Source: Callorhinchus milii (Eukaryota). From it: 64,000 nt of DNA. Below the pieces are notes generated by a model. That model made no database searches. It saw only the letters and a program-made list of their open reading frames with translations, and was not told where the DNA came from. Shown one piece after another: positions 1-40,200 of the stretch. Position numbers and translations under genes: made by a program. Position 1 is the first letter of the stretch. Every line of letters starts with the position of its first letter. The stretch lies in assembly GCF_018977255.1 (NCBI RefSeq), contig NW_024704771.1, positions 868,001 through 932,000 on the forward strand. The letters run 5' to 3'.

Positions 1-329
1 AGTAGATTTTGATGAAACAACAGTGCTTGTGAAAGTTGAAGGTTTGTTGTGTTTAACCTGTACATTTCCCTATTCTAAGCTCATATTCCCACCCCGTCCC
101 AGTCAATATATTTTCCAGCCTCAGAAATGCACCATAATCTCTACCAGAGCCCCGTGTGAACTGCACAAAGTAATGATTTGTCATTCTGGCTCAATGTGGG
201 CAATTGGCTGCCGCGTAACACCCACAAAATACTCAGTCAATTCACTGTACAGTATATTCTGTGAAGGGCTTTGAGTCGTCTCAAAGACGTGATTAGGCTC
301 TATATCAATTTCATTGGAAGGACTCTTGT

Positions 330-520
330 TGTTTGGTTTAGAGGGTTGTGGGTTGAAGCCCCACATCAGCACCTGAGCTCATAGTTCAGGCTGATACCAC
401 ACTCTGTCACTGAAGGACACTCAGTGTTAGAGGCTGACGTTTGGTGAGACGTGAAAATTGACAGTTTGTACCTGTCTGTTCAGGTGGACATTAAAGATCC
501 CATAAACTGATGGAGAATGT
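330..520 (+). mobile_element. Degenerate SINE (Deu-domain/SacSINE-like core)
   Basis: ggttgaagccccac...ctgttcaggtggacattaaagatccc; homologous to 63240-63430 and to the body of 1255-1440. Confidence 0.55.
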
Positions 521-700
521 AGTGTATTGCAGATTAATTGGCCATTCACTTGATGGTGCAAATGACTGTAACCTTAGCCTTCAAAAGCAGTCACTACAAA
601 TGACTAATTAGGTGTAAAGTACTGAATGTTTTGATTTGATCAATTGTTACAAAAGTTCTGCCTTTGTAATTGTTGATAACACAATGTATTACTGTTACAG

Positions 701-976
701 ACCGCAGACGGCTGCCCTTGATTTCCATGGCAGGTTACCAGGACTCGAGAATTAAACTCACGTGTAAATCAAAAGGCTGGTATCCCGAACCTCGTGTAGT
801 TTGGTTTGATAGGAGTGGAGCAGAGGTGAAAGCCAAGACTGAAACATGCACTCAGAGGTCTGAAGACTGTTGGAAATGTGAAAGTAGTATTGATATAACC
901 AGCGATTCTACAGACAGATTCACGTGTCTGACAAGAAACTTTCTGGAGGAAAACGAGGCAAAGATCCAGGTATCAG
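701..976 (+). CDS. BTN gene A IgC (C2-set) exon
   Basis: ttacag|ACC...TCAG|gtcagt, 276 nt. Encodes [18 protein letters not shown]...FTCL, the typical BTN IgC motif (C..GWYPEP.V.W). Confidence 0.93.
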
Positions 977-3900
977 GTCAGTGAAACATTTGCAAAAATA
1001 TAAGCACTTCAATGCAACGTATTACAGTTCATATTGTGATGTGGAACAATCCACAGCAGCTCCCAATGTTCAATCTGAGGCTTTCATTCTGATTTTCTTT
1101 CAGCCAATTTCATTATAGGATAGTTTGCTATTGTAATTGCAAATAATTAATTACACAACAACAAGATACATGTGTATAGCGCCTTTCACGTGGGGAGGAC
1201 ATCCCAAGGCACTGGACAGTGACAGCATTTCATGTATTACTGAAATACAGCAGTCCTGTAGCTCAGTGGTTAGAGCACTCACCTCGCAAGCGAGAGACCT
1301 GAGCTCGATTGTCGGAGACGCTGTCCTTCAGATGAGACGTTGAACCGAGGACTTTTCTGCTCCTGTTCAGGTGGATTTTAAAGATCCTCTGACACTTTTC
1401 ATGAAGGGAAAGAAGTTTCTCCAGGTATCCTGGCCTACAATCCTGCAGATAAATTTGTCATTCACTACATAACTGTTGGTGGACATTGTGTGCAGAAAAT
1501 TGGCTGCCATGTTAGCATACAAATAAACAGTCACTACATATCACTGTAATGCCTGTGAAACGCTTTGAGACTTCATGAAAATGTAATAAGGTTCTATATC
1601 AAATTAAAGAATGAAAGGATTATTATTAAATATGATACAAAATGTTCCTTATGTTACAGAGGTGTTTTTCCACCGAGGCCCAGACTGGCTGGTGGTTTTC
1701 CTTGTGGCGTTCACTCTTGTGCTTGGAGCAGTTGGTGTGTTGATGTTCTTCTGCAGAAAACGATTGAAAAAAGTTAAAGGTAATAAATGATTTTGAGATT
1801 CCCCCAAAATATAATCTTTACTTTCGTCTTTTATATAATCCATAACATAGTGAGGAGAGCACTGGCAACGTCTTAGTGGCAGTGACAAAGGCGAGAATGA
1901 GGGTTTCCGAGGTGTTGGGTGTGAGGTAGGGGCAGCGGCCGTTGATGTGATGGGTGTGAATTAAGGCAGTTTTGATGAGGCAATGCATGTGAGGGAGAAA
2001 GGAAAGCTGGGGATCAAACCACATGCCATGGTTGTCACTGAGAGAATTAGAGAGAGAGGCCGGGGAGGCTGAGGAGGTCAGAGCCAGAAGAGAGGATGTG
2101 TTGGCAGGAGCCAAAGGTGATGGCTTTAGTTTTATCAAAACAAACAAATTGAGACAGATCTTGAAGGAGGCATGAGAGGGGGTGAGATGATATGGAGTTC
2201 CAGAGGGTGGGGGCAGAGAGGCTGAAGGCTCGCCACCAATGTTTGGGTGGGCAAAGCACGGAATATGAAGCAGGCTTGAGGATGCTGAGTAGAGGGAGCG
2301 GACAGGTAGGTAGGAGGTTAGGAGGTTCAGAGGTAGGGAGTCGCAAAGCCGAGGAGGTGAGGTGAGGATCAGGAGCTTGAACTGTCTCCTCTGAGGCATG
2401 CGGAGCCGGGCGATCATGAGGTTGATAGTGTCGCGGTGCCTGGTGCAGGAGAGGACACAGACTTCAGATTTCTGGACAATCTGCAGCCTGTGGAGGAAGG
2501 AGTTGTGGAGGCCGACAAGCAGGGAGTTTGTGTAGTTGAGCCTGGATGTGATGAACGTGTGAATAAGGGTCTCGAGAGAAGTGGCAGAGCCGGGCAATGT
2601 TGCGGAGGTGAGGAAAAGCGAAGCGGGTCATGGCAACGATATGGGGGATGAAGGACTGTTGAGAGATGAGCAGGACACTGAGGTTCCACTTTGGCTCCAT
2701 GATGTGTAGAGGGCAGCCATAAAGGGTGATGCTGTCAGCGCCCGAGTTATGGAGGCACTGACAGGAGCAATGCAGGACGGCCTTGGTCAACTGGAGAAAG
2801 TTAGCTCTCATCCAGGACTTGATGTCTGACAGACATTCTGTGAGGACAGCAGCAATCCTGGAGTCGAGGTGGAGAGGTGGAGTTGGGTGTCATCACATAC
2901 ATGTGGGAGTTGACTCCATGTCTATGGATGATGTCACCAAGAGGGATCTATACTGAGTTCGAGGAAATTTTGGCTCATCCAGGCCTTGATATCTCACAAT
3001 CAACTGGACAGATCATCAGGGACCTGGGGTCGAGAGTAAATTTTGGGTCATCCACATCCATGTGGGAATTAAGTCCATGTCTGTGGATGATGTTGAGGGA
3101 CAGGGTGACTGTGTTGGCCAGTAGTGGGCAGAGGAAGGGCAATTGGTTGGTGAGCAGATGGGGGGGAGGTTGTTGAGGGAGCAGGTGGGGAGGTTTATGT
3201 TATGAGAAGGAAGATGTGGCCGGGTGTATTTTGTTGATTTTTGTTGTTGAATGTGAAAGGCGCAATATAAATGTCATTTTATTGTTATTATTCTCTATTG
3301 TCTCTCACACATAAAGAGAAGTTGTGGGATAAAAGGCTGGAAATGTTAATCAGAATGTGTCTTGTCGTTTCCAAACTGCAGAAGGATTTGCTCACACAGA
3401 GGGATATGAAGATGTGGAATTCTTTGCCCCAGAAATCTGTGGAGAAGGAATCAATGTGAATGTTTAAATTTAAACAAATAAATTCAGATGGATCTTGAAG
3501 GAGGCATGAGAAGGGGTGAGGTGGGATGGAGTTCCAGAGGGTGGGGCCAGAGAGGCTGAAGGCTCGCCCACCAATGTTGGGGTGAGCAAAGCAGGGAACA
3601 TGAAGCAGGCCGGAGGATGCTGAGTGGAGGGAGCGACAGGTTGGTAGGAGTTTAGGAGGTCACAGAGGTAGGGAGGAGCAAAGCGGAGGAGGTGAAGTGA
3701 AGATCAGGAGCTTGAACTGTATCATTTGAGTCATGTGGAGCCGGGGGATGAAGGTCTGTTAAGAGACGAACAGGACACTGAGCTTCCACATTGGCTCCAT
3801 GATGTGTAGAGTGCAGCCATGAAGGGTGATGCTGTCAGTGCATGAGTTATGAGGCCACTGAGCAATGCAGGACGGCCTTGGTCAACTGGAGAAAGTTAGA

Positions 3901-6900
3901 TCTCATCCAGGACTGACAGACATTCTATGAGGACAGCAGTGATCCTGGAGTCGAGGTGGAGTTTGGTGTCATCACATATATGTGGGAGTTGACTCCATGT
4001 CTATGGATGATGTCACCAAGAGGGATCTATACTGAGTTGGAGGAAATTTCGGCTCATCCAGGCCTTGATATCTCACAATCAACTGGACAGATCATCAGGG
4101 ACCTGCAGTCGAGAGTAGATTTGGGGCCATCCACATCCATGTGGGAATTAAGTCATGTTTAAATGAGAGACAGAGACTTGGATAGTAGAAATATTAATGG
4201 CTTTGGGTAAAGAGCAGGGAGTAGGGTTAAAAATATTAAAATTGGTGGAACAGGCTCGTTGGCTGAATTGTCTCCTTCTGTTCCCCTTTTCCTTTCCGAA
4301 AAGCTGATTTCAATTAGAAATAACCTTAAAGCAGAGTCTTTAATGCACTATTATTTTCACTAATATTTAATAAAATATTGTATTAACATTTCTGCTGGAT
4401 TGTGTCCATTACATTTAGGGGAAACGTCCTACAGTTACTGATAAGGACGACACTAACGATTGTGTCTTTCTTTTCCAGTTTATGAAAATCTAAAAAAGGG
4501 ATTTAAAAATCTGGGTAAGTAACAACATTACAAACATCCCCGAGCCTCAGCCTCCCCGAGAGTCAGGTCCTCGGAGACCTGCCACAAGCCCTTCCTGTGC
4601 TCACTGGTGACCTCAGCATTTACATATACACACACACCCAGACATATACACACACATACCCAGACATATACAGACAACAAGCACACACACACACAGACAT
4701 ATGCACACAACACACACACACAGAATCACAGAACAACCTGAACTAAACCCACCTCCTATGGAATAAAGAAACGTGACAATTCTGTGCAGATGAGGAGAAT
4801 CTCACTGTGTTTGACTGGAGAGAGAAAGTGAAACTTACACTTTAACACAAATTAAATCATTCTGATACAATGAATGAATTAAAAAACATGATGTGAACGA
4901 GTCTCTGAATGTGCATTCCATTCGGTTAGATTCTGTTCCAAAATATTGAACATTTACATCTGCGACTTGAAACAATTTACATTGATACAATGCCTCCATG
5001 CGCCGGGTCAGGGTGAAAGGGGAGGTGACCGTACACACGGTTAAAGAGGAAGGTCTTCAGGTGCGATGAAAAAAAAGAGTGGGGAGTGAGATGGAGGGAT
5101 TGAGACAGGGAGTTCTGTGTGTTTGGTGGTAAGTGGTTGAAGACATGGCCACCAATGGTGGGGCGGAGGGGAGTCAGGGATGAGCAGAAAGCCAGAGCCG
5201 CCCAAATAAAGGGGTGGGTAGAGGAGTGGGGTGTGAGCAGGTCGGAGAGGTAGGGAGGTGCTGGACATGAGGTGATTTGTCAGTGAGTGTGAGGATCTTG
5301 AAATGGATCTGTTCAGTGATAGGGAGCCGGTGGAGCCCGGCAAGGGCTGGAGTGACGGGGTTTGGAGTTTGTTGTGGGTAATGTACCAAATGTTAAGGAT
5401 TATTAATATTATCATTATTCACTTTTTGAGATTGTAAATGTTTAATCAGTTTTGTCAGTTTCTACAGTGCCAAAAATCCCCATTCTTAATGTGAATTATA
5501 ACACAAATTGTGAAATAATTTGGTTTGTTTACTGATTTTATTTCCTTCATTTGATGTGAGCACGTATCCTCCTATCACAGTGAGTTTGGAAAGTTTGAGC
5601 TTAAAGGAAAATAAAGAAACTGAATAAAATAAACCAGATAAGTTTGTTAACTTTTTTTCAAAAATTTAAAATTATATTTTCTAAAACCTTTTCTTTTGTT
5701 TTAAAGATAATGAACTGAAATCTGCCAAACAAGGTACAGTACATTGTGTTATTGGCACTAAGTGTTTATGATGGAATTCCATCAGTGATGATGTCCCATA
5801 AGTGAATCAATCAATGACGACTGACTTCAACATTCAAACCGTCTTCACTCAATGACTTTCAGTCTCGTGAGAAACTTTACATTGCTTATTAATATTTGTT
5901 TCTTCCTTTAGACCAAAAATACATGAAAAAAACACTGGGTAAGTTTTAATCTCCTGGAGCGTGAAATAAGTTTCCTTCTCATCGCGCCTCCCCTTGTTTT
6001 AACCGGATGATTCTGGGAAGGGTCAGTGGGAAAGGGGGTTAGTGAGAACTTTGGATAATGATAAGCTGTGAGGTTTCAGCAGGAAAAACATGAGCAATTC
6101 CCCTCAATCCATCCTCTGTGGACCACAAGCCTTGCTTCTGGACAACCCATGTCTAAACATTAGTAAACCCGGGAGCATGGCGCTGGGGAGAGGGTTCATT
6201 CTGTATCAGACAGACACGGAAACTCTACACACAGTTTGTGGAACTCCGAATAGTTTGGTTTGGAGACTCTTAACCCCAGTGATGGGTTTGTGTGTGTGTC
6301 AGACTCTGACCAAAACTAAGTCCATGTGTTTTTTTTAATTGGTGAAAACAAACTCTGATTGGGATTTGGTGAGATCCTGAAGCCTCAGTGCTGAAGGGTT
6401 GTTTATCAGCTGAATCACAAGACTGTGAATAGGTTCAGTGTGTAACAGTGGGGGGTGATTTGTGGAAATAAACAATCAATAAATATATTGTTTCCTTTCA
6501 GAACTGNAAAAACAATTCACCAAATCAGGTACTTGATGGCTTTATCCTCATTTACTGTTGTTGATGTTATTGATGTAGAATTGTGCTGCTGCTCAAAGGA
6601 TCAATTATTATCAACTCTGATAAAGATAATAAATTAAATGTAAGAAATACGATTATATTAAGATTATAAGCAAAGTTTGACGTGAACTTTCAATGTACAG
6701 TTCAGTCATCTCACATCTACAAATGTGATCAGTTTGTCAGACCCTGTAACCTGGAGAGATCTGAACCCAGATATTGAGTTACATCGATAGATTACAGTAG
6801 AACAGAAGAAATGCTGGAGGNAAAAAGCCCAATATCCATCTAGTTTGCCTTCCACCTTCATGGCAGTCACATGCAAATATGTCCCAAACTACCTGTGTAC

Positions 6901-9900
6901 TATATCCCATAACGTTATTTCCTAAAAGAACATTTCTAATCTGTGTTTGAAAGAATCTACTCAATAATAATAATCCTTGCATTTGATATAGTGCTTTTCA
7001 CATCTTCTAGACGTCTCAAAGCGCTTCACACAATGTACAGTAAAGTGAATTTACTGTATATTTGTGAGCGAAATGCTGCAGTCAATTATGTACAGCAGCG
7101 TCCCACAAACAGTCGAGGATTGAAGTGACCAATTTATTATTATTTTCCTTTCTAGAGGGATTATTATCAGGTGTGTGGAGTAAGGAAACTTGCCCATGGT
7201 TTTTCCCTGTGGGAATTGAACCCAGGTTTCTCGCTTGCAAGGGGAGTGCTCCAACCACTGAGCTACAGGACTCCACAGTGTCATTGGTGAGATCATCCTC
7301 TAAGTACAGACTCACCAATGACCTACAAAGTGACCCGATTACCCCACTATTTCCACTTCCTATTGATCTTTTGATACATCCCAACAACAGATTGTCAGGA
7401 ATAACATACATTGAAGTTTACAAAAGATGAAATTATAAGCAAAATCTTATTAAATTAAAACTTCTGTTTCCTTCCAGAGTGGGAGATCGTTGGCAGTTGT
7501 AAATGTAAGTTACCCCACATTACAGGCTGGTTATACACCCCACATTACAGGCTGGTTATACACCCCACATTACAGGCTGGTTATACACCCCACATTACAG
7601 GCTGGTTATACACCCCACATTACAGGCTGGTTATACACCCCACATTACAGGCTGGTTATACACCCCACATTACAGGCTGGTTATAGACCCCACATTACAG
7701 GCTGGTTAGAGACTCTGCGTTGTCAGTGTGCGGAGGAAGTTGCTCTAATTGACGATGTGTAGAAATTATCAGCAAAATGCAGATTCATTAAGTGATTAGC
7801 AAAATATCACTCATAACCTAATTTTCAGTCTAGTTTCCAGTTGTGTAAAGTGCACACATCACATTGTAGATGTGCATCCCAATAAATACCGTATGTGTGA
7901 CAGGACGGGGTGGGTGTAGCAGAGACTGTTGTGTCAAGTGGGCTCACCATTGCGAGTTGTGTTAGTGACACCCTGATAATGAGCTCCTGAGCCCAGCTGA
8001 TAAACTTGTGTTTTCTCTCAGGCTGCAAGGATCTTCTCGTGGGGTTTGGTAAGAGACTTGATTTAATACAATGCTTCATCACTTCGTTGAGACGTCGCAA
8101 AGCGCTTCACAGAATATACTGCAAGGAGAATTGACTATATTTTCTGGGCAAATCGCGGCTGCTAATTGCACACAGACAGCAGTGTCCCACAAACAGTCAT
8201 GGATAAATGACCAAATTACTATTTTTGGGGAAGGAATTATTACCCCCAGAAAGGGATCCACTAATCGACTAACGATCGGGTTCCTACTTGCTGCGAGGTA
8301 AACAGAGGCAAGTGGAGTAAGGAAACTTGCCCAACGTTTCACGCTGCCAGGAACCAAACCCAGTTCCTCTCTTTCTTCCAAGGCGAGTGCTCTAACCACT
8401 GAGCTACAGGACTCTGGAATATTAGTGCAATAAAGAAAATGATTGTGTAATGACGCATAAACACAACTGTATAAAACAACCTCAATTGAACAAGTTGATT
8501 CAAACTAAATTTTCTTTCATTTCCAGTCAAGTCCAGAATCCACAGTTATGCAGGTAAGACATTAATATAGTATAAATGACATAATTCAGAACTGCTCAGA
8601 TCCCACCCCAGATTTAGCACAAAGATGTACAGACAGAAGGTCCCAGCCTGGTCTGTGCTGAGGTATCTGATCTCAGTCGGGGAGGGAGGGGGCTCTACAC
8701 ATGGCCTCAGGGCCCGGATATGGATGGACAATCAGCCAAAGTCACTGTTCCTCAAAACATTCAGGGATTCCTCCCCCACTCCCATCCCAGCCTTTCTGTA
8801 AATACCGGGTGAGGAGAGGATCAGGCTGTGAGGCCCTCAATGGTTGAATAACCAACCAACACTGGCTGTCTAGACTCTCACATGAACAAGTCACTTGAGA
8901 GAGCTACAGACTAGAACCAGACACAGTGAGTGTGAGCACTGAGCCCGACTCCTCCTCATCGCCCTCTGCACGGTCACTGAAGCTGTGATGCCATGTTGAG
9001 GTTGTAGAGATGTCAGTCCAATCCTGTGCCCCAGGCGCTGGGCACAACAGCTGTTAGTGTGTGACTGGAGAATGGTATGTGACTGTACCTGTGGAAGGTA
9101 CTGATAGACCAAATACTACATACACTGTTACTGTATTTACTACATTACATGGTGTCGTACACACTGTCACCTGTCGTAAAATACTGACTTTATATTGTGT
9201 GAAGGAATCGGATTACTGACCAATAACAGTCAGTTGTCATGACTGGATGCTCATGTGATGTCCTCGTGTGAGTCCCTCTTGACTCAGAACATCAGTGTGT
9301 TTCAACTAACGATGACCACATTATGGTGACATGGTGTTTGCCCACAGCAAACTCTGATCTTGTTGTCTGATCAGCAGCCCATATATTTATGTATAACTAA
9401 CCCCCCTCCCCCCCGATCAATCAACCTGTCCACTCAGTTTCAAGATCTAGATTAGTCCACATCGTCTCTCCCAGAGGGACACCGCACCCAAATCACACCC
9501 AGACCTCACCTACGCCATACACAGATCAAACCCAGACCTCACCTACACCAAACCTGTACTACCCAAACCACAACTACACCACACCCAAACCTCACACAGA
9601 CCACACAGGGCACACAGCTACATGTCTTAATGATAACAGCTGACAACATTCTGCTTTCTTACAGGTTACAAGGAGGTTCTCACAGAATTAGGTAAGGTAT
9701 TTGGGTCAGTTTGATAAAGAGCCATTCTGTCACTCCCCTTTCCCCGAATAAATGTTAAAATATATTAATGGGGAGCGGGAGCGAGGAGGGGAATATAAAG
9801 CAGTTTGGGGAACAGAGAAAATGTGACTGGCAAAACCGTATAAAACCATCCTCATCAAATAAATCTATACCAACTGAACTTCCTTTATTTTACAGAAAAG

Positions 9901-12900
9901 ACCCAATTTGGGTTGTACAGAAGTTATGCAGGTAAGATATTTAATATCATATAAAGTGTGAAATTCAGAAATCCTTGACAGACCACAGGGTAACAATCTG
10001 TATCTGCCACCTGTCTACCAACCGTGCGATCCTATCAGTGCACTCTCACAGAGGTAGGAAGGAGCAAAGCCGTTGAAGGTGAAGATGAGATTTTTGAACT
10101 CGTTCCTGTGGAGGATGGGGAGTCAGTGGAGCCGGGCGAGGGTGGGGGTGACAGGGTTTGGGAGAGGACACAAGCTGCAGAATTCTGGATGATACCGCTC
10201 CACAAAGACCCTCACACACACAATCTCACCCTCTCCCACAAAAACATACACGGACATCCCCCACACACATCCTCACCTCCCCCTCCACATACACACACCT
10301 TCACCTGCCCCTCAGACACATCCTGACAAACAACAACTTGGATTTGTATAGTGCCCTCCATACCGGATGGCGTCTCAGAGCGCTTCACAGTAACAGATCC
10401 TGGTGTCAAGTGAGGGGGAAGAAGGTGACCAAAGGCACGGTCAAAAAGAAAGGTCTTTAGCCGAGACCTAAAAGCAGGAAGGGAGGGCACAAGGCGAAGG
10501 GAGTGAGGAAGGGAGTTCCAGAGCCTCAGGGCATAGTGGCTGAAGGCACAGCTGCCAATGGTGGAGCGGAGGAATCGGGGGACAAGGAGGAGGCCAGACC
10601 CGGTGAAGCGAAGGCAACGGGCACTGTTGTGAGGAGAGAGGTCAGAAAGGTCGGGGCAGAGGAGTGGAGGGATTCAAAGACAAGATGGAGGGATCTGGGA
10701 CAGGCAGCCAGTGTTGGTGTCAGTGCTGTTAGTGTTAGTGTTGGTGTCAGTGCTGTTAGTGTTAGTGTTGGTGTCAGTGCTGTTAGTGTTAGTGTTGGTG
10801 TTCAGTGCTGTTAGTGTTAGTGTTGGTGTCAGTGCTGTTAGTGTTGGTGTCAGTGCTGTTAGTGTTAGTGTTGGTGTCAGTGCCGTCAGTGTTAGTGTTG
10901 GTGTCAGTGCTGTTAGTGTTAGTGTTGGTGTCAGTGCTGTTAGTGTTAGTGTTGGTGTCAGTGCTGTTAGTGTGAGTGTTGGTGTCAGTGCTGTTAGTGT
11001 TAGTGTTGGTGTCAGTGCTGTTAGTGTTAGTGTTGGTGTCAGTGCTGTTAGTGTGAGTGTTGGTGTCAGTGCTGTTAGTGTTAGTGTTGGTGTCAGTGCT
11101 GTTAGTGTTAGTGTTGGTGTCAGTGCTGTTAGTGTTAGTGTTGGTGTCAGTGCTGTTAGTGTTGGTGATTCTGTGTTAGTTTTGATTGTTTAATTATGAT
11201 GTGAAGCCGACGTCACTTATTGTAACTCTGCGGTTCCCCTGTGACCCCCTCACGTCGCGGCTTTATACCCACTGCTCGGCCTCGGCTCCGCCCCGCGCTC
11301 TCCTGACTCCACTCCACACCCTCACATCCCCCACAAACACAATCACATCCCCCAACAGACACACCCTCAGCCCCCAACACACACGCTGACACACCGCCCC
11401 ACACACACCCACATCCCCCCCACACATAAACACTCACATCCCCCCAACACAGTCTCACATCACCGCAACACACACCCTCACATCCCCTCCACACACACCA
11501 TCACATTCCCCACCACATACCCACTCATATCCCCCGCCACACATACACCCCCTCACATCCCCCTCACACGCACCCTCACAGCCCCCCACACACGCACGCC
11601 CTCACATCCCTCTCTCACACACAACCTCTCCACACAACCTCTCATCCCCCCAAACATACACCCTCACATCCCCACCGCACCTACATCCTCACATTCTCTG
11701 ACCACATACATCCTCACATCCCCCCCTAACACATACACACTCATATCCCCCGCCCACACACACACACCCTCACATCCCCCCACAGACACACACTCTGCCC
11801 CACAAACACACACCCTTGCATCCCCCTCACACACACCGTTACATCTCCCCACATGCACCCTCACATCCCCCTATAAGCACTCTCACATCCTCCCCACACA
11901 CCCACACCTCCCCCACACACTCATACACCCCCCACCACATACACACCCTCATACCACCCCCAGATACACACCGTCACATCCACCCCCAAACACACCATCA
12001 CATCCCCCCAACACAGACTCACACCAACCCCCAAACACACAACCTCACATCTCCCCCCACACAGACACCTTCACATCCGTCCTGAAACACATCATCACAG
12101 ACGCCCCCACACAGCCACAGTCCCCCCACACAGACTTTCACATCCCCCCCACACACAAACACTCACATCCCCCAACACAGTCTCACACCACTCCAACACA
12201 CACCCTCACATCCCCTCCACACATACACACACACACATCACCCACACACACACACACATCACCCACACACACACACACTCATATCTCCCATCCACGCATA
12301 CACACCTTCACATCCCTTCAACTCAGCCTCACACCACCACCCCACACATACACACCCTCACTTCCCCCACATACAAACCCTCACATTCCCCACACACACG
12401 CTAACATTCCCCCCACATGCACCCTCGCATTCCCCCACACGTACCCTCACCCCCCCAACACACACCCTCACACTGCCCCCCTATACACACCCTCACATGG
12501 CACCCCCACATGCACCCTCACATCACCCGCCACACACACCCTCAAATACGCCCACCCAAACAACCCTCACATCCCTCCCACGGACGCACCCTCAGCCCCC
12601 CGATACATACCCTCACACCCCACCCAAATTCACATCCCCCACACACGCTCACATCCTCTCCACACACCCTCACATCCACCCAACACAGACTCACACCAAC
12701 CCCCAAACGCACAACCTCACATTTCCCCCACACACACCTTCACATCCGACCCGAAACAGACCGTCACAGCCCCAAACACTCTGACATTCCCACATACTCA
12801 CACCTTCACCTTCCCCCCCACACACCCTTACGTCCCCCCCTCACACACCCTCACGTCCCCCCCTTCACACACCCTCACATCCCCCCCCACACACACCCAC

Positions 12901-13597
12901 ACATTCCCCCCCACACAAACCCCTCCCCCACAGACACACAGACTCTCAGCCTTTTTGCGGATTCTGTTCCCAGGAGATGTCGATGTTTTACACAAAGGCT
13001 TCTCTCCCGGTGACGACGCTGAAGATCATCTTATTTATGATTGTAAAGGTGTCCGACAATAATGGTCTGATTCTCCCTCCAGTTACAGTCACTCTGGATC
13101 CTGACACAGCCCATCCCCGGCTCATCCTGTCTGAGGACCTGACCAGTGTGAGACGCGGAGACGAACTGCAGTCGCTCCCTGACTCCCCGAAGAGGTTTAG
13201 TAACTATCCCATTGTCCTGGGATCTGAGGGCTTCACATCGGGGAGACATTACTGGGAGGTGCAGGTGGGCAACAAGTCATGGTGGGCTGTGGGATTGGCC
13301 ACAGAGTCTGTCAACAGGAAACAAGCAATCACATTGTCACCAGAGGATGGGGTCTGGGGGGTGAGGCTGGTGGGTGGGGACTGTTATGAGGCTCTGACAT
13401 CACCCCGCACCCGCCTGTCCCTGACAGTGAGACCCGGGAAGGTCGGGGTTTACATGGACTATGAGGAGGGACAGGTGTCATTTTACAACGCTGACAACAT
13501 GTCTCATCTCCACACTTTCACCCAAACTTTCACTGAGAAACTTTATCCTCTGTTCAATCCCTGGTTTGGTTCTGACCCTCTGACAATCTGTCGGTGA
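701..13597 (+). CDS. Butyrophilin-like gene A, 5'-partial gene model (IgC-TM-8 mini-exons-B30.2); signal and IgV exons lie upstream of the window
   Basis: join(701..976,1660..1779,4479..4514,5912..5938,6502..6528,7478..7504,8022..8048,8527..8553,9665..9691,9896..9931,13083..13597). All exons have ag/gt ends and phase 1, and the frame is open to the TGA. The domain order is the canonical BTN architecture. Confidence 0.88.
1255..1440 (+). mobile_element. SINE fragment: tRNA-like head joined to a Deu-like core
   Basis: TAGCTCAGTGGTTAGAGCA A-box, then gtccttcagatgagacgttgaaccgagg...aggtggattttaaagatcc. Confidence 0.6.
1660..1779 (+). CDS. BTN gene A transmembrane exon
   Basis: ttacag|AGG...AAAG|gtaat, 120 nt. 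Encodes [40 protein letters not shown] (hydrophobic helix followed by a basic stop-transfer). Confidence 0.92.
1850..3200 (-). mobile_element. L2-clade LINE fragments (RT C-terminal region)
   Basis: Minus-strand peptides [23 protein letters not shown] and [11 protein letters not shown] match the intact L2 RT at 52641-53978. Confidence 0.85.
3490..4150 (-). mobile_element. L2 fragment, internally deleted tandem duplicate of ~2155-3070
   Basis: Near-identical blocks (e.g. gatctatactgagtt..gaggaaattt.ggctcatccagg); paralogous ORFs at 2877 and 3956. Confidence 0.8.
4479..4514 (+). CDS. BTN gene A cytoplasmic mini-exon 1 (36 nt, [12 protein letters not shown])
   Basis: Polypyrimidine tract + ccag acceptor, gtaagt donor, phase 1-1. 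Confidence 0.8.
5045..5385 (-). mobile_element. L2 3' fragment
   Basis: Minus-strand peptide [26 protein letters not shown]. Confidence 0.75.
5912..5938 (+). CDS. BTN gene A mini-exon 2 (27 nt, DQKYMKKTL)
   Basis: tttcttcctttag acceptor, gtaagt donor, phase 1-1. Confidence 0.8.
6502..6528 (+). CDS. BTN gene A mini-exon 3 (27 nt, ELXKQFTKS; one N base)
   Basis: tttcctttcag acceptor, AG|gtact donor (weaker), 27 nt, phase 1-1. Confidence 0.68.
6963..7274 (-). mobile_element. tRNA-Ala-derived SINE with L2-type tail
   Basis: Reverse complement has an A box, a TGC anticodon loop and a GGTTCAATTCCC B box; tail gaagcgctttgagacgtc...(att)n. Confidence 0.85.
7478..7504 (+). CDS. BTN gene A mini-exon 4 (27 nt, EWEIVGSCK)
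   Basis: ctgtttccttccag acceptor, gtaagt donor, phase 1-1. Confidence 0.75.
7512..7708. repeat. 25-bp tandem repeat (caccccacattacaggctggttata), ~8 copies
   Basis: Direct inspection; it starts immediately after the mini-exon 4 donor. Confidence 0.95.
8022..8048 (+). CDS. BTN gene A mini-exon 5 (27 nt, CCKDLLVGF)
   Basis: gttttctctcag acceptor, gtaaga donor, phase 1-1. Confidence 0.7.
8057..8414 (-). mobile_element. tRNA-derived SINE, same family as 6963-7274
   Basis: ctctaaccactgagctacaggact head on the reverse strand, plus the shared body and tail. Confidence 0.82.
8527..8553 (+). CDS. BTN gene A mini-exon 6 (27 nt, VKSRIHSYA)
   Basis: ttttctttcatttccag acceptor, CAG|gtaaga donor. It ends in ..YA, like the pre-B30.2 exons at 9896 and 39151. 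Confidence 0.8.
9665..9691 (+). CDS. BTN gene A mini-exon 7 (27 nt, GYKEVLTEL)
   Basis: ctttcttacag acceptor, gtaagg donor, phase 1-1. Confidence 0.78.
   Translation, partial: VTRRFSQN
9896..9931 (+). CDS. BTN gene A mini-exon 8 (36 nt, [12 protein letters not shown])
   Basis: cctttattttacag acceptor, CAG|gtaaga donor, in frame with the B30.2 exon. Confidence 0.8.
10040..10710 (-). mobile_element. L2 3'-end fragments, interrupted by C/A-rich sequence
   Basis: Minus-strand peptide [21 protein letters not shown]; tail ...gcactatacaaatccaagttgttg. Confidence 0.75.
10711..11166. repeat. 27-bp tandem repeat (gtgttagtgttggtgtcagtgctgtta), ~17 copies
   Basis: Direct inspection; it produces the spurious (VSAVSVSVG)n ORFs. 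Confidence 0.95.
11290..12930. repeat. C/A-rich degenerate satellite (cacaccctcacatccccc-like) in the last intron of gene A
   Basis: G-poor + strand with a recurring ccctcacatcccc unit; same family as 39200-50110. Confidence 0.92.
13083..13597 (+). CDS. BTN gene A terminal B30.2 (PRY-SPRY) exon
   Basis: ctccctccag acceptor. Encodes [19 protein letters not shown]...[14 protein letters not shown]...[16 protein letters not shown]...FTEKLYPLF, ending in TGA. Confidence 0.96.
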
Positions 13598-18106: not shown

Positions 18107-18340
18107 CTTCTGCTCAGTGTCAGCGACACAAACCCCCGCACAGGCGGCGCTTCCTCTCGTCCCCGTCTCACCCCCTCCCTCTGGGGAAATGTCATCATTG
18201 TTATTATTATTACCTTCTGATCCGGGCCCAGGGGGAGGGTCACAGCCACAAACCTCCCAAACAAGTGGCTTCTGCTGATCTCTGGGTCTGGACACAGCCC
18301 CAAAGCTGAGAGTGGCAGCAGTTTGTGGGAGTGAGCGGTG
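17780..18340 (+). promoter_or_regulatory. CpG-island promoter/5' region of the TRIM pseudogene
   Basis: High CpG density, YY1-like GCCGCCATT, ETS-like CCGGAAG and two CTCF-like motifs, directly upstream of TRIM exon 1. Confidence 0.55.
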
Positions 18341-18949
18341 GAGGGGACACGGCTGCAGAGAGCAGCACCGGAGCTCAGCGGAGGGTCTCACTTGCCCCGT
18401 TTGCCCGGACCTGGTCAAGGGTCCGGTTTCTCTGGTTTGCGGCCACAGCTTCTGCCGCTCGTGTCTCGCAGGGCTTTGGGAGAGGCCGGAGGCTCACTCC
18501 TGCCCGGAGTGGCGCCAGGTGTGTCCGGGAGGGGAGCTGAGAGCAGGTCGACCAATGGATAATTTGGCTGAAAAAGCTCAAAATCTCAGTCTGGATCCGA
18601 AACGGGGAGAAAGGGAACACCGTTGTGACGATCATCGGGAAGAGCTGAAGCTGTTCTGTGAGACGGATAAGAAATTGATCTGTGAGATGTGTCTCATTTA
18701 TGCTGAGGAACAGAATCACAAATCACTCAGTGATGTCCATAGACAAAGCTGCTGAGATCTACAAAGGTACACAAGGAGCGGACTTTATAATGTGACTGCA
18801 ATTCTCTCTCTCTTTCTTGAGCCGAGTGTCTGACACACACGGAAACTATTGCTGTGTTTAAGAGAATCCAAAGCAGGTGGTGATTGAGATATAAGGGAGA
18901 AACTATTTCCACTGGTGGGTGGGTCGTAACCCGAGGATTTATAACAGTT

Positions 18950-25370: not shown

Positions 25371-25902
25371 TCGGGTGGGACCTCTACACACAATCTAATA
25401 CTTTCCCAAATGAGGTGTCCCTCCAGGGAGAGAGTCTGCATTCCAACAATCTCTCTCTGGGGTTTCTATGTGCAGAGGGGATGTGTGGGATCCTCAGATT
25501 GGTTTGGATACTCTCAAGTACGGTGATGGTTGGGGCCAATAGAACATTGTGGAAATATTTGCCCCAAATTGTGGGCTTTTAACTGAGCACATTTTGGATA
25601 AAAGTGCGAGGAGTTGATTGATGTTATTGAGAGGTACATTTTACTGCTAAACTATAATTTTTCACGTCATTGATTAGCAATTAAACATAAAGAAATATCA
25701 CAGATTAGATTGTTGTACAATCAATTATTAATGTTTTCTTTAATATAAACTGCGGGAACGACACAGCGCAGCGCGAAGGGCTGAATGGCGGTTTCCACTC
25801 CGCGCTCCGTGTGAAGGCCTCAAAACAACAGCTTTGCTCACAAAGCTCATCAGTGTCCTGACTGTGGATTACAGGGGGTCACCACCTCCTCTCTCTCAGG
25901 GT

Positions 25903-26331
25903 NNNNNNNNNNNNNNNNNNNNNNNNNNNNNNNNNNNNNNNNNNNNNNNNNNNNNNNNNNNNNNNNNNNNNNNNNNNNNNNNNNNNNNNNNNNNNNNNNN
26001 NNNNNNNNNNNNNNNNNNNNNNNNNNNNNNNNNNNNNNNNNNNNNNNNNNNNNNNNNNNNNNNNNNNNNNNNNNNNNNNNNNNNNNNNNNNNNNNNNNNN
26101 NNNNNNNNNNNNNNNNNNNNNNNNNNNNNNNNNNNNNNNNNNNNNNNNNNNNNNNNNNNNNNNNNNNNNNNNNNNNNNNNNNNNNNNNNNNNNNNNNNNN
26201 NNNNNNNNNNNNNNNNNNNNNNNNNNNNNNNNNNNNNNNNNNNNNNNNNNNNNNNNNNNNNNNNNNNNNNNNNNNNNNNNNNNNNNNNNNNNNNNNNNNN
26301 NNNNNNNNNNNNNNNNNNNNNNNNNNNNNNN
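25903..26331. other. Assembly gap (429 N)
   Basis: Run of N. Confidence 1.
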
Positions 26332-34243: not shown

Positions 34244-37200
34244 GTAAGGAAACACATTGAATCTGTTTGATTTCTGTTGGTGTAAATTGCTGAAGATAAA
34301 GGTAAATGATGTGCACAGACTGGTTGCCGCCTTCCCTCCACAAAATACACAGTCGCAGCACTTCACAGTCTATCCTATGAAGATTTTGAGACTTCTCGGC
34401 GACGTGATAATCATAGAATAATCAGAAAATCATAGAATTATACAGCACAAAAGGAGGCCATTCAGCCCAGTAGGCCAACTCTTTTAAAAGTGCCATCCAA
34501 ATCAATCCCAATCCCTTGCTCTTTCCTCATAGCCGCGCAAACCTGTCCTTCACAAATAATTATTTATAAGGTGCTATATCAAATGTAAGGATTATTATTG
34601 TTATCTCAGCAACAGTCTATTGACAGAGTTTGTCTGAGGCAGTGACTGAAAATCCTATCTGTATCCATTGTTTATTATTAAGCAGAGAAATTCACAGTCA
34701 CTGGCCCGGCCCTCCCTGTCCCAGCCATTGCTGGTTCAGATGTTGTCCTGGACTGTAAGTGTTCCATAGACCTGCCACGAGAGGGTGTGGAGGTGAGATG
34801 GTTCAGGACAAGATACGACTCCCCTGTGCACTTATACAAGGAGGGGCGACAGCAACTGGAAACACAGGATGAAGCCTACAGACACAGAACACAACTGTTT
34901 GTAGAGGAATTTATCAACGGCGATGTGTCTCTCAGACTGGGAGATGTGCGGGTGTCAGATAATGGAGCGTACACGTGTTTTGTTGACTATGCCGGATGGT
35001 ATGAAGAGGCAGTGATAGAGTTGAAAGTTATAGGTCAGTAATGTTTATAATTCATTTTATTTCATGTAATCTGTGTGTACAAACATTCATTATTTGTTAA
35101 TGTTATCTTCAAAATGCAATACTTTATAAAAACAAGAACAAGTTATCATTGGTGTAAATGTATTCAGAATGTTGTGGCCTTCAGTAAAGTTACTGCTCTG
35201 TAATGTCCCGGGTATTAATATTGTCTGATTCACGTCTCCTGTCTTCCAGTTCTTGGCAGTCAGCCTTGGATTCACGTTGATGGGCAGCACAGTGATGGTG
35301 TGAGGCTGCGGTGTGAATCCAGTGGATGGTTCCCAGCACCAGAGGTTCTGTGGTTTGATGATCAGGGAAACAACTTAACAACACTCAGTAACTGGACGGT
35401 CAGAGAGGATTCTAAAGGTCTCTTCAGTGTTAAAGGCCAAATAGAAATCATCCATTCAACCAATAAGATCAGGTGTCTGATTCACAATTCAGAAAATGAA
35501 CAAGAAGGCAAACTCCAAATCTCAGGTCAGTAAGTACACTGAAATATTAACAATAGACTGATAGATATGATGCAGATTTGTACAGCACATGAAGTGAAAA
35601 CGATCAGTCTGGATGATACGGTCCACCTGATTTCATCCTTTCAAAATACCAAACTCACCATCTTCAACAACAGCAACAAATGACATTTGTGAAGTGCCTT
35701 TCATGTCAGGAGGACATCCAGTGTGAGAGGCACTATGCAAAGGTGGTGGACAATCAGGGATTTGGACCCACCTGGGGATTGGGGTCAACATGTGGATGGA
35801 GTTTCACAGAATTGGGGCAGAAGTATGGAGTTAGTAGGCCACAGAGATAGGGAGAAGCCGGGCCATGGAGGGCTTTGAAGGCAATGAACCTATTCATTAC
35901 AACAACAAGATTACATTTGTATAGCACAAATGTAATTTGTTTTACTTGACAATAAAGGTTTGAGATTCATCCAGAAATCACATTTGTAAACTGAAATAGA
36001 TAGATATTAGGAATGATTTCCTTTCCTCTGGCATGGTAATTCTCATTCAAAAATGCTGCCGTTACTTCTTCTCAATAAACTTTCACTAAACTCTTTACAA
36101 ACAGGGCTGCTGCCCCATTTCCAACCTGCCCTTCCTCTCCAAGGTGCTGGAATGAGTTGTCGCCTTGAAGTTCAATTCCTTCCTTTCCCACTATTCCCTG
36201 TATAAGTCTTTCCAAACTGCTTCCTGCTGCTCACAGCATCATTACAGCCCTGGCCAAAGGCACAGGTGATGTTCTCTCTGTCTTTGACCAGGAGACCCTG
36301 TGTCTACTTGTCCTTCTCTATCTCTCGCTCACCTTTCACACTGTTGACCACTTCTCCTCCGTGAATCACCTCACAGATTCTGCACATTATTGGTTTCACT
36401 CCTGTCTGTCCCAGCATCTCCATGTTATCTTATTCAATGGCTTCTCCTCCTGCCCAGTGTATTCACAGATGGTGTTCCTCTCCTTTTCCTTATCCACACA
36501 TTCACCCTTGGAGTCTGGCTCTCAGGGACCGGACTAACGAGACAGCCACAAAGAATGGATTTTATTCTGACATTCCCTTACCAACCACATCACTTTGGTG
36601 CCACTTCAGCTCCAAGACTCCATTTATCTCCTGGGAAAAGTATATGAAAATAATAATCCTTGTATTTGATACTGTATGTTATCATGTATTTGAGATGTCT
36701 CAAAGCCCTTCACAGAATATACTGTAAAGTGAAATGAATGTATATTTTGTGGGTGAGACGCGGCAGCCAATTGCAGACAGCAGTGTCCCACAAACAGTCA
36801 CGGATTGAGTGATCAAATTATTATTATTCTATTGTATTATTTGATGGGATTATTAGCTCTGGAAAGCGATCTACCAATCAATGAACAAGCGGGTTCCTAC
36901 TTACTGCTGGGTAAGCAGAGGCATGTGGAGTTTAAACATTAAACTTGTCTAATGTTTCGTTCTGCCCCGGAATCTAACCCGAATCTTCTCGCACTACACT
37001 ACCAGGACTTCACTTGGAGTGAAGCCTGTGACAGCTACTGAGCTACTGTGTGTAACACAGTCACATGGGGACAAATAAAGGTATTTGTGTTTGACATCAG
37101 AATAGATGTTTAAATGTCTATTTACATTTCTTGACAGACGAGTTCTTTCCCAAAGTGCCAGTGGGTTTGGTGGTTTCCGCACTGCTCTTAGGACTTGCCA

Positions 37201-40200
37201 TATTGGTGCTGAGTGTTCTTGTCGGCTTCAGTGTAAAACAGCGCCGAGAGATCAAAGGTACGTTCCCATCAGTAACATCTCCCATCACAACACTGTTTGT
37301 GTAAGAATGTGCAAGTTCTATAAAACAATTGGTCCCTCCCTTCACTCAGTGACCCCCGCGGCCTGTTTCATGTCACCGCCTGATCCTCCCTCCCCACCAT
37401 CAGCAGCTCAGGCTTTCAGCCTCTCTGCCCCCACTCTCTGCAACTCAAGCCAAGAATCCTTCCGACTTCACCCCCTCCCTCTCCATCACCTCTTTCAAGG
37501 CCTGTCCCATGACCTTCCTCATTCTGCATTTTTATTTAATTTTACCCTCTCCCCCCCACCCCAACCCCAGCTCAGACCCCAGCTCAGACCCCAGGTCAGC
37601 CCCCAGCTCAGACCCCAGCTCAGACCCCAGCTCAGACCCCAGTCAGCATTGTGAGGGCTTTGGGATATCCCAGCTCAGATCCCAGCTCAGAGCCCAGTCA
37701 GCTGTGGAAGGTGCTGTGTAAATGTAAATGTTATTGTAATTCAAACCTCCTGTAATTGTGTTGAGCTGCACTTTGTGTAGTTTCTAACTGTTAATGTTGT
37801 AAACATATAGACTGAGCATTAAACAATACTGGATTCAGGAGCGGTTTCTAACAGTTTTGTTTTGTATCCTCCAGATCTTGAGAAGAGAGTGGGTAAGTCA
37901 TCAAAATAAAATAACAATTTCACGTTGTGATTAACCTCATTCACAAGCTTCACACAAAGCAGACATAGTTCATAGAATCATAGAATTGAACAGCACAAAA
38001 GGAGGCCATTCGGCCCATAGAGTCTGTGTCGGCTCTTTGAAAAGAGCAATGTAATGTCAGTCCCACTCCCCAGCCCTTTCCCCATAACCCGCAAACCCGT
38101 CCTCCTCAAATACCATCCACTGCGTTTTTAAAAGTTGTTATCAAATCAGCCTCGACCGCCCTCTCAGGCGATGCCTTCCAGATCCAATGAGATTAATCCC
38201 GGCCTCTCCAGCCTTTCCTCATAATCAAGGGTTCCCTCATTCCGCAGTTGGCTCTATCCTTCTCACTGTGTACCACCCTATCTAACTTTGTGTCGTCGCA
38301 AACTTGGAAATGGTGCTTGTTATACCCAAGTCCAGATCATTTATGTTATAGTTTGCCAACAAAATACACAGTCACTACACTCTCCAGTAAATCGTGCAAA
38401 ATGCTTATGAGGAGCCAAATCTATTTCAAGGATTATTATTATAGAATAACAACAACTTGCACTTATATAGTGCCCTCCACGCAGGATAGCGTCTCAGATC
38501 ACTGAACAGAGACAGAGCCTGATTCTGAGCCGGGCCGAGGGTGGGGGGGGGGGGGGGGGGGGATGGGGGAGCCGACTATAAGCACAGTCGAAAAGGAAGG
38601 TTTTCAGGTGGGATTTGATAAAGAGGAGAGAGGGGGCAAGGCAGAGGGTTTGAGGGAGAGTGTTCCAGAGTTTCGGGGCGTAGTGACTGAATACACGATT
38701 TCCAATGGTGGAGCGGAGGGCAGTAGACAGGGAAGTAGACAGGTGTATGAGGGATAGAGACTTGAAGGGGTTAATGATAGGGCGGGGCAGCTGTTGTTAA
38801 CACTTTGCTCTGAGAGCCCATATAGACTCGATGGTGAATGGCCTCCTTCTGGGCTGTAAATTTCAATGATTCTATTCCATGAATTATTACAGAGTGTTTA
38901 ACTCCAAACATTGGTCTGTTTCACAGCTTCAACTTTCCCTTTTCCTTCCTCAGACAACATTGGCTTATGAACACACACACATTGAGGGAGAGAGAGAATG
39001 AGTGAGTGTCTCTATAACACAGGGAGTGAGTCAATGAGGGCGGGAGGGAGGGAGTGAGGAGGAGAGTGAGGGAGTGAGAGAAGGAGGGAGGGAGTGTGAC
39101 TGAGTTAGGAGCTGACGAAGGTCTGATCACTTCTTTCTTCTTGATTCCAGGGTTGAAAAGGAAGAACACATATGCAGGTAAGATTCTGAGTGACCAAGAA
39201 ACCATCCCACACATATACATACCCTCACCCCACATCCACTGCCCCCCCACCCAACACACACACCCCACACACATAACCACATATCCCCCAACAAACATAC
39301 CCACACATCCCCCACACGCACACCCTCACATCCCCCCACACAGCCCCTCGCATCCCCCCACACACCCCTCACATCCCTTCATACACACACCTTGTCAGCA
39401 GCCCCATGCACACCCTGACATTCCCTCACACAAACACACTCATCTCCCCCCAAACACAACCTCACCCCCACACACCCTCGCATTCCATTACACACACACC
39501 CTCACATCCCCCCCACACACACCCCTCACATGCCCCCCACCCCACCCCCACACATCCTCAAATCCTCCACACACAACCTCATATCCCCACACTCTCACGT
39601 TCCCCACACAAACCCTCACATCCCCCACACACAACCTCATATCCATCACACGCGCATTCCCTCACAATCCACCTCCCACACACACCCTGAAAAGCCCCCC
39701 ACACACACACACACTCTCACATCCCACCCACACCCCCTTCACACCCCTCCATACACACACTCACATCCCCCCACAAACACCCTCAAACACATAGCCTCAC
39801 ATCCTCCCATAGACTTTCTCAAATTACCCCCCACACACATCCTCACATTGACCCCAACCAACCTCATATTAACCCATACACCCCTCACACTCCCCCCACA
39901 CCACACCCTAAAATTCGCCCCCACACACAGCCTGTCATCCCCCACCCCACACATAAACACTGTCACATCTGCCCGACACGCACACACCCTCATATCCACC
40001 CACACACACCCTCACATCCCCTCAAACACACTCACCCTCACATCCCCCCCACATACAGTACCCTCACATTACCCCCACACACATCCTCACATCCCACCCA
40101 CACACACCCTCATATCCACCCGACACACACTGTCAAATCCCCCCCAAACATAACACAACATGTGGGAGCAGGAGGAGGCCATTCGGCCCTTCGAGCCTGC

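What the first reader, a model, noticed from the sequence alone, without database searches (positions are those of the whole stretch)
4479..9931. Array of eight symmetric mini-exons (all multiples of 9 nt) builds a tunable cytoplasmic stalk
Seen: exons of 36, 27, 27, 27, 27, 27, 27 and 36 nt, all phase 1-1, add 78 aa between TM and B30.2 in gene A; gene B has only 18+27 nt (15 aa). Two exons end in ..SYA|gtaaga with homologous downstream intron (8554+ and 9932+), which shows tandem duplication. Known: mammalian BTNs have a few 21/27-nt juxtamembrane coiled-coil exons that transmit B30.2 signals, and chicken BG genes expanded 21-nt heptad exons. Inference: an independent 27-nt-based expansion in which any subset can be skipped in frame, changing stalk length or partner choice.
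Basis: partly seen in the sequence, partly recalled or inferred. Interest (0 to 1): 0.7.

Follow-up and report, generated by a model that had tools for sequence, protein, structure and literature searches.

The report
Nine-mini-exon butyrophilin cytoplasmic stalk, elephant shark
An elephant-shark butyrophilin-like immune gene builds its 87-residue helical stalk between membrane and B30.2 domain from nine (not eight) tiny 27/36-nt exons, an enlarged version of the short-exon juxtamembrane region already known from mammalian butyrophilins and also present in gar.

Summary
The exon array is real, but the count is wrong. Gene A has nine phase 1-1 mini-exons (36, 7x27, 36 nt = 261 nt = 87 aa), not eight or 78 aa. 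Chance expectation is about 0.1 such exon, and control sequence gave none.

The window is Callorhinchus milii scaffold MU249860.1, inside a tandem butyrophilin-like/TRIM cluster. Stalk size differs between paralogs:
- Two neighbouring copies keep all nine exons, and gene models join them in order.
- One copy has seven exons.
- A diverged paralog with a UniProt V9K-series entry, probably transcript-derived, has 36+6x27 nt. These match A1-A7 exon for exon.

Exons A8-A9 arose by tandem duplication of A6-A7. They add 63 nt, or 21 aa, which is exactly three heptads.

Gar has 30/27/27/27-nt exons, so the 27-nt unit is ancestral rather than an independent invention.

The 87 aa carry one continuous heptad register (p=0.001) and are predicted helical. 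Their closest solved relative is the human BTN3A1 intracellular domain with its juxtamembrane coiled coil.

Skipping any internal single exon stays in frame but destroys the register, so free "any subset" skipping is unlikely.

Verdict: a new, enlarged member of a known architecture, of moderate to low interest. The scan's notes showed no earlier record of this feature.

The parts
1..41 (+). Gene A: 3' end of the IgV exon (the rest lies upstream of the window)
   Evidence: Reads ..VKVE + G, donor gtttgt at 42. It joins in phase 1 to the IgC exon, giving D-RRRLPL as in protein P0162.
701..976 (+). Gene A: IgC exon (276 nt, phase 1-1)
   Evidence: Pfam PF22705, butyrophilin-type Ig-C, E 5.9e-22.
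1660..1779 (+). Gene A: transmembrane exon (120 nt, phase 1-1)
   Evidence: Hydrophobic segment followed by CRKRLKKVK. The AF2 helix continues from it into the stalk.
4479..4514 (+). Mini-exon A1, 36 nt
   Evidence: Acceptor 7.0, donor 4.6. Present in models P0016, P0162 and P0166. Counterpart of the 36-nt exon of paralog L002.
5707..5733 (+). Mini-exon A2, 27 nt
5912..5938 (+). Mini-exon A3, 27 nt
6502..6528 (+). Mini-exon A4, 27 nt (masked N at 6507, read as X)
7478..7504 (+). Mini-exon A5, 27 nt, the 'EW' exon (EWEIVGSCK)
   Evidence: W-x5-C is also seen in paralog L002 (EWDKYRKCN) and gar (EWSAIQDCA). Paddlefish, bichir and electric ray keep the EW.
8022..8048 (+). Mini-exon A6, 27 nt (CCKDLLVGF)
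   Evidence: Counterpart DCKNQLEQF in L002. Its acceptor flank resembles that of A8.
8527..8553 (+). Mini-exon A7, 27 nt, ends ..SYA|gtaaga
   Evidence: Both flanks are homologous to those of A9.
9665..9691 (+). Mini-exon A8, 27 nt (duplicate of A6)
   Evidence: Present in L001 and L004 copy C2, absent from copy C1.
9896..9931 (+). Mini-exon A9, 36 nt (duplicate of A7 with a 9-nt insertion), ends ..SYA|gtaaga
13083..13597 (+). Gene A: B30.2 (PRY-SPRY) exon including the stop codon
   Evidence: Pfam PRY 5e-25 and SPRY 1e-26. Acceptor ctccctccag, phase 1.
37138..37257 (+). Gene B: transmembrane exon (120 nt)
37875..37892 (+). Gene B: mini-exon B1, 18 nt
39151..39177 (+). Gene B: mini-exon B2, 27 nt, ends ..TYA|gtaaga like A7 and A9
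50260..50771 (+). Gene B: B30.2 exon including the stop codon

Best explanation
[quoted passage not shown] Nine phase 1-1 mini-exons (36, 7x27, 36 nt) are most likely spliced together constitutively. They encode an 87-residue, Lys-rich, largely alpha-helical segment that continues the TM helix. It carries one unbroken heptad pattern with a short kink at a conserved EW...C motif. By analogy with the human BTN3A juxtamembrane region, it most likely forms a parallel coiled-coil dimer that sets the distance, orientation and pairing of the B30.2 domains relative to the membrane and ectodomains. Seven exons (36+6x27) are the older state of this gene group. A tandem duplication of the last two exons added 63 nt, or 21 aa, exactly three heptads, which lengthens the rod without changing its register. 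The stalk therefore appears to be tuned between paralogs (15, 66 or 87 aa) by gain and loss of exons, not mainly by free exon skipping. Shown here: the exons, their conservation, the duplication, the heptad pattern, the helix prediction and homology to BTN3A1. Inferred: dimerisation, constitutive splicing of gene A itself, and the signalling role.
For: Exons versus chance: 9 observed against about 0.1 expected, and 0 in controls. Domains: BTN-type IgC, PRY and SPRY. Species and locus: window 61609-64000 is 100% identical to MU249860.1 of GCA_018977255.1, and the relatives are named C. milii butyrophilins. Gene models containing all nine exons in order: XP_042200686.1 (P0016, neighbouring copy, 95% identical over the stalk) and UPI000457575E (P0162, IgV through the start of B30.2). 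All nine exons with intact splice sites are present in L001 and L004 copy C2; copy C1 has seven. The diverged paralog L002 has 36+6x27 nt, phase 1, collinear with A1-A7, with no detectable intron similarity but 32% peptide identity (E 2e-6). Its protein includes UniProt V9KKS8, and elephant-shark transcripts were deposited with PMC3964593. Gar BTN1A1-like has 30/27/27/27-nt exons. Heptads: a/d positions are 72% hydrophobic against 27% elsewhere, in a single register over 87 aa, p=0.001, with a 3.5-residue periodicity peak. The register is lost on any internal single-exon deletion and kept without A8+A9. AF2 predicts helices 18-84, 87-94 and 97-133 of P0016, with stalk pLDDT of about 67-78. The best solved relatives are BTN3A1 intracellular domains (5hm7, E 7e-51), and the alignment extends into the juxtamembrane helix. 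The BTN3A JM coiled coil governs dimer pairing and signalling (PMC10665462).
Against: There is no transcript evidence for gene A itself. The models with nine exons are computational and come from near-identical neighbours. I did not verify that V9KKS8 derives from a transcript. Among the young copies, exons are not consistently more conserved than introns: A vs L001 gives 1.5% against 4.3% (p 0.001), but A vs C2 gives 2.5% against 2.9% and A vs C1 gives 9.6% against 8.3%. Three of the four exon differences from L001 change the amino acid, so selection on the stalk sequence is not demonstrated. Stalk pLDDT is only moderate, and the model is a monomer. The 7-exon paralog L002 shows a weaker heptad signal (p 0.19). 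Coiled-coil dimerisation was not tested.
Confidence: 0.75

Rival explanations
1. One reading: the nine symmetric exons are alternative cassettes, and cells produce many isoforms by skipping arbitrary subsets to tune stalk length or partner choice.
For: All exons are phase 1-1 and multiples of 3 nt, so every subset stays in frame. Paddlefish BTN1A1-like isoforms X1 and X2 differ by exactly one 27-nt exon. Macaque BTN3A transcripts lacking one 'heptad' exon are reported (PMC6790196).
Against: Removing any internal single 27-nt exon shifts the heptad register by two and collapses the a/d contrast from 0.45 to 0.04-0.27. The retrieved elephant-shark models contain either the full set or read-through truncations, never a partial set. 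The 7-exon stalk of XP_042200745.1 reflects a genomic copy that lacks A8 and A9, not skipping.
Confidence: 0.12
2. Gene A is a young, silent or decaying duplicate. Its mini-exons are intact only because the duplication is recent, and the stalk has no function in this copy.
For: Exon and intron divergence are equal against copies C2 and C1, and most exon changes are non-synonymous. The cluster holds chimeric and relic genes (the chimeric model). The annotation splits or truncates several copies.
Against: The IgC, TM, all nine mini-exons and the B30.2 exon are open, with all 20 splice sites intact. Against L001, exons plus splice sites are three times less diverged than introns. The continuous heptad pattern is preserved.
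Confidence: 0.1
3. Some of the nine are chance splice-site matches, and only a few are real exons.
For: Two donors are weak by my simple matrix (A2 0.5, A4 1.9).
Against: The weak-donor exons A2 and A4 are conserved in all copies and have counterparts in L002. Chance expectation is 0.1. All nine fit a single heptad register.
Confidence: 0.03

Closest known systems
Human/primate BTN3A (BTN3A1/A2/A3) juxtamembrane region
   Same: The layout is IgV-IgC-TM, then several very short exons, then one B30.2 exon (PMC6790196; PMC5829056 describes four small exons 5-8). The JM forms a coiled-coil dimer that controls pairing and phosphoantigen signalling (PMC10665462). BTN3A1 intracellular domains are the best PDB sequence hits, and the alignment enters the stalk.
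   Different: The shark gene has nine exons and 87 aa, against four exons and a roughly 40-residue coiled coil (273-312) in BTN3A. It also has a Cys-rich EW...C-x-CC kink. The ligand and partner are unknown, and orthology to any particular mammalian BTN has not been shown.
Chicken BG genes (cytoplasmic 21-nt heptad exon arrays)
   Same: They are BTN relatives in which tandem duplication of tiny symmetric exons makes a long cytoplasmic coiled coil whose length varies between paralogs and haplotypes (PMC4046983).
   Different: BG exons are 21 (sometimes 24) nt, so one exon equals one heptad. There are many more of them, and BG genes lack the IgC and B30.2 exons. Here the exons are 27/36 nt and out of register with the heptads, and the B30.2 exon is kept.
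Gar (Lepisosteus oculatus) BTN1A1-like XP_069047490.1 and paddlefish BTN1A1-like
   Same: Phase-1 mini-exons of 27 nt lie between TM and B30.2, including an EW exon; gar also keeps the W-x5-C spacing.
   Different: Gar has only four exons (30/27/27/27 nt, 37 aa). The EW exon lies directly before B30.2, whereas the shark genes have two to four more exons after it.

Membership tests
Butyrophilin / butyrophilin-like (BTN/BTNL) genes | IgV plus BTN-type IgC ectodomain exons | tested here: met
   IgC exon: PF22705, E 5.9e-22. Only the last 41 nt of the IgV exon lie in the window, but the IgV is complete in related model P0162.
Butyrophilin / butyrophilin-like (BTN/BTNL) genes | Single transmembrane exon followed by short juxtamembrane exons | tested here: met
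   A 120-nt TM exon and nine 27/36-nt phase-1 exons.
Butyrophilin / butyrophilin-like (BTN/BTNL) genes | C-terminal B30.2 (PRY-SPRY) domain encoded by one exon | tested here: met
   PRY 5e-25 and SPRY 1e-26. Best PDB hits are BTN3A1. The fold matches BTN3A1 and TRIM21 PRYSPRY at rmsd of about 1 A.
Butyrophilin / butyrophilin-like (BTN/BTNL) genes | Linkage to the MHC or extended MHC | not testable with these tools
   Only a neighbouring TRIM gene is seen. The scaffold is unplaced.
BTN3A-type juxtamembrane coiled coil | Heptad a/d hydrophobic pattern in a helical segment next to the TM | tested here: met
   a/d positions 72% hydrophobic against 27% elsewhere, p=0.001. AF2 predicts helices.
BTN3A-type juxtamembrane coiled coil | Forms homo- or heterodimers that control signalling | not testable with these tools
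   Needs biochemistry or a multimer model.
Chicken BG-type heptad-exon array | Exons of 21 nt, one heptad each, in large numbers | tested here: not met
   Exons are 27 or 36 nt and there are nine of them.
Chicken BG-type heptad-exon array | No IgC and no B30.2 domain | tested here: not met
   Both are present.
Alternatively spliced cassette-exon array | Transcripts with different exon subsets | not testable with these tools
   No RNA data could be queried. The retrieved models show only full sets or read-through truncations.

The most novel reading that the evidence does not exclude
The tandem elephant-shark BTN paralogs use stalk length (15, 66 or 87 aa, with the last step exactly three heptads) as a pairing code, so that only length- and register-matched coiled coils dimerise. 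The W-x5-C / C-x-CC kink shared with gar would then be a functional hinge or lipidation/metal site that couples B30.2 ligand binding to the ectodomain. That would make this an early, modular form of butyrophilin inside-out signalling.
Probability: 0.1. Interest if true: 0.55.

Novelty: new member of a known kind. Interest (0 to 1): 0.3.

Why it matters
The short-exon juxtamembrane architecture of butyrophilins, down to 27-nt phase-1 exons and an EW exon, is present in both a holocephalan and a holostean. It therefore predates the split between cartilaginous and bony fishes. Within one gene cluster the stalk has been resized by exon gain and loss, and the latest step preserves the coiled-coil register. 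This offers a natural length series (15, 66 and 87 aa) for asking how the juxtamembrane rod transmits B30.2 events, a live question for human BTN3A1/BTN2A1. It also shows that several NCBI models in this cluster are split, chimeric or misnamed.

Tried and rejected
- **Word-indexed homology searches on the two stalk regions**. These returned only the query clusters plus P0162, so they say nothing about other species.
- **DNA for the electric-ray and horn-shark BTN genes** could not be fetched because the gene ranges are too long. The exon structure in elasmobranchs remains unknown.
- **Exon versus intron divergence among the young copies** gave inconsistent results, and 3 of the 4 exon differences from L001 change the amino acid. 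I do not claim purifying selection from them.
- **MAFFT did not align the stalks of the paralogs correctly**. I relied instead on exon mapping and BLASTP.
- **The Foldseek search was dominated by the B30.2 domain.** Full-length BTN cryo-EM chains aligned only at rmsd above 20 A, so it does not inform stalk geometry.
- **Literature searches** found no paper on shark butyrophilin stalks and none giving 27-bp exon sizes in mammals.
- **The 15-nt and 24-nt candidates at 7156** were rejected because they lie inside a SINE copy.
- **XP_042200745.1 as evidence of skipping** was rejected. Its 7-exon stalk comes from a genomic copy without A8/A9, and the model is chimeric.
Full report
**What is in the sequence**

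Reading 1-12000 and scoring splice sites with a simple vertebrate matrix gives gene A on the + strand:
- the end of an IgV exon (1-41);
- an IgC exon (701-976, 276 nt);
- a TM exon (1660-1779, 120 nt);
- nine mini-exons, A1 to A9: 4479-4514 (36 nt); 5707-5733, 5912-5938, 6502-6528, 7478-7504, 8022-8048, 8527-8553 and 9665-9691 (27 nt each); and 9896-9931 (36 nt);
- a single B30.2 exon (13083-13597).

Every exon is phase 1-1. Pfam confirms a butyrophilin-type IgC domain (PF22705, 5.9e-22) and PRY plus SPRY domains.

The true figures are nine exons, 261 nt and 87 aa. One masked N (6507) lies in the fourth mini-exon and is read as X throughout.

**Is it more than chance?**

At thresholds set by the weakest of the nine exons, the 11.3-kb interval has only 15 acceptors, and nine of them are followed by a donor at exactly 27 or 36 nt with an open phase-1 frame. 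The minus strand of that interval gives 0. About 36 kb of other window sequence, on both strands, also gives 0. Markov simulations give a mean of 0.10 and a maximum of 3 in 300 runs. Two extra candidates at 7156 lie in a SINE copy and were discarded.

**Gene B**

- IgV exon: about 34686-35033.
- IgC exon: 35250-35525.
- TM exon: 37138-37257.
- Mini-exons: only 37875-37892 (18 nt) and 39151-39177 (27 nt).
- B30.2 exon: 50260-50771.

No other candidates lie in its 13-kb interval.

**Origin of the window**

The best protein relatives are all Callorhinchus milii. Window 61609-64000 is 100% identical to the start of locus L004 on MU249860.1 (GCA_018977255.1).

The region is a tandem array:
- L001, just upstream, is a near-identical copy (90-99% nt) with all nine mini-exons.
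- L004, just downstream, holds copy C1 with only A1-A7 and copy C2 with all nine.

**External support for the exons**

- XP_042200686.1 (P0016, from L001) contains TM, all nine exons in order and B30.2. It is 95% identical to gene A over the 87 aa.
- UPI000457575E (P0162) runs from IgV through IgC, TM and all nine exons into the first residues of B30.2.
- A much more diverged paralog 2.9 Mb away (L002; XP_007891622.1, XP_042200723.1 and UniProt V9KKS8) has a stalk encoded by exons of 36, 27, 27, 27, 27, 27 and 27 nt, all phase 1. These are collinear with A1-A7. For example, its EWDKYRKCN and DCKNQLEQF correspond to EWEIVGSCK and CCKDLLVGF in gene A.
- BLASTP of the stalks gives 32% identity and E 2e-6, while the flanking introns share nothing detectable.

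Exon number, size and phase have therefore been held while the sequence drifted. This is the strongest sign of constraint.

V9K-series UniProt entries are, to my knowledge, translations of the RNA-seq transcripts deposited with the genome paper; the deposit itself is confirmed in PMC3964593. I could not verify that link for this particular entry.

**Duplication**

A7 and A9 share about 80 nt of upstream and about 50 nt of downstream intron (84%, E 1e-6). The acceptor regions of A6 and A8 also match (E 0.008). The A6-A7 pair was therefore duplicated in tandem to give A8-A9, with a 9-nt insertion in A9. Copy C1 and L002 lack the duplicate, so seven exons is the older state. The last exon of gene B also ends ..YA|gtaaga.

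**Deeper history**

Gar BTN1A1-like (L003) has mini-exons of 30, 27, 27 and 27 nt, phase 1, the last being EWSAIQDCA. Paddlefish, bichir and an electric ray have an EW motif in the same place. The 27-nt unit and the EW exon therefore predate the split between cartilaginous and bony fishes. The unit is not an independent shark invention.

Published work describes the same layout in mammals. [quoted passage not shown] Chicken BG genes carry the extreme 21-nt version (PMC4046983).

**What the stalk looks like**

- Across all 87 residues a single heptad register puts hydrophobic residues at 72% of a/d positions, against 27% elsewhere (p=0.001 against shuffles). The periodicity peak is at 3.5 residues.
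- In that register, E15-K20 and D22-K27 are possible g-e' salt bridges for a parallel homodimer. This is my own reading of the register printed.
- AlphaFold2 on P0016 predicts the TM helix running on to residue 84, a short helix at 87-94 around the EW...C motif, and a second long helix at 97-133 before B30.2. Stalk pLDDT is 67-78.
- The closest solved sequences are human BTN3A1 intracellular domains (5hm7, E 7e-51), and the HMMER alignment reaches about 55 residues into the juxtamembrane helix. Foldseek agrees for the B30.2 part.
- In BTN3A the juxtamembrane coiled coil (residues 273-312) determines homo- versus heterodimer pairing and is needed for phosphoantigen sensing (PMC10665462).

**Skipping**

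Any subset of exons is in frame. However, a 9-aa exon shifts a heptad register by two. Deleting any internal single exon lowers the single-register contrast from 0.45 to 0.04-0.27. Deleting A8+A9 (21 aa, three heptads) leaves it at 0.41. The duplication that produced the nine-exon form is therefore exactly register-preserving, and the pattern argues that the exons are used together.

I found no elephant-shark model with a partial set. XP_042200745.1 has a 7-exon stalk, but that reflects copy C1, and the model is a 67-kb chimera joined to the B30.2 exon of copy C2. Two models are read-through truncations, one ending after the TM exon and one after A1. The only clean skipping example is a paddlefish isoform pair that differs by its 27-nt EW exon.

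**Caveats**

- No RNA data could be queried, so expression of gene A itself is unproven.
- Among the young copies, exons are not reliably more conserved than introns: 1.5% against 4.3% versus L001 (p 0.001), but no difference versus C2 or C1. Three of the four exon differences from L001 change the amino acid.
- Coiled-coil dimerisation is inferred, not shown.

**Verdict**

It overstates the independence of the 27-nt unit and the freedom of exon skipping.

This is an enlarged member of the known butyrophilin juxtamembrane mini-exon architecture. Paralog-to-paralog resizing (2, 7 or 9 exons) is the main point of interest.

Noticed in passing
window 7512-7708: A near-perfect 25-nt tandem repeat (7.9 copies, 99% matches) starts 8 nt after the donor of mini-exon A5. 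Copy L001 has a related array.
   Followed up: partly
window 10710-11167 and 11315-12922; gene B about 39200-50100: The last stalk intron contains a 27-nt minisatellite (17 copies) followed by about 1.6 kb of degenerate C/A-rich 23-nt repeats that run to within about 160 nt of the B30.2 exon. Gene B and L001 have the same kind of repeat over 8-13 kb, with GC skew down to -0.84. A possible role in splicing or in B30.2 exon exchange is unexplored.
   Followed up: no
window 1780-1794 and 4515-4523; proteins P0163, P0165, P0167: Reading through the TM-exon donor gives ..KGNK-stop, and reading through the A1 donor gives ..LGK-stop. NCBI models of paralogs (XP_042202668.1, XP_042200776.1, XP_007883561.1) end exactly this way. 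B30.2-less forms, analogous to BTN3A2, may therefore be made.
   Followed up: partly
L001 1424-4112 and 10001-32877; L004 2001-69144: There are annotation problems. One BTN gene is split into 'butyrophilin-like protein 2' (IgV-IgC) and 'nuclear factor 7, ovary-like' (TM-stalk-B30.2). XP_042200745.1 is a 67-kb chimera of copy C1's exons with copy C2's B30.2 exon.
   Followed up: partly
window 7478-7504; L002 16980-17006; L003 6277-6303: A W-x5-C motif in the 'EW' mini-exon is shared by elephant-shark paralogs and gar. The shark genes add a second Cys three residues later (C-x-CC or C-x-x-C). Its function is unknown.
   Followed up: partly
window 6976-7273 and 8057-8414: Two copies of a tRNA-derived SINE-like element sit in the stalk introns A4-A5 and A6-A7 (74-80% identical to each other).
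   Followed up: no
window 18279-18752: A TRIM-type RING plus B-box exon lies between the two BTN genes. Earlier notes describe TRIM/BTN chimeric relics nearby.
   Followed up: no
window 52536-53975: A 480-codon open frame with a reverse-transcriptase-like look (..YADDTQLY..), probably a LINE remnant downstream of gene B.
   Followed up: no
window 25902-26331: A run of 430 N (gap or mask), left untouched.
   Followed up: no
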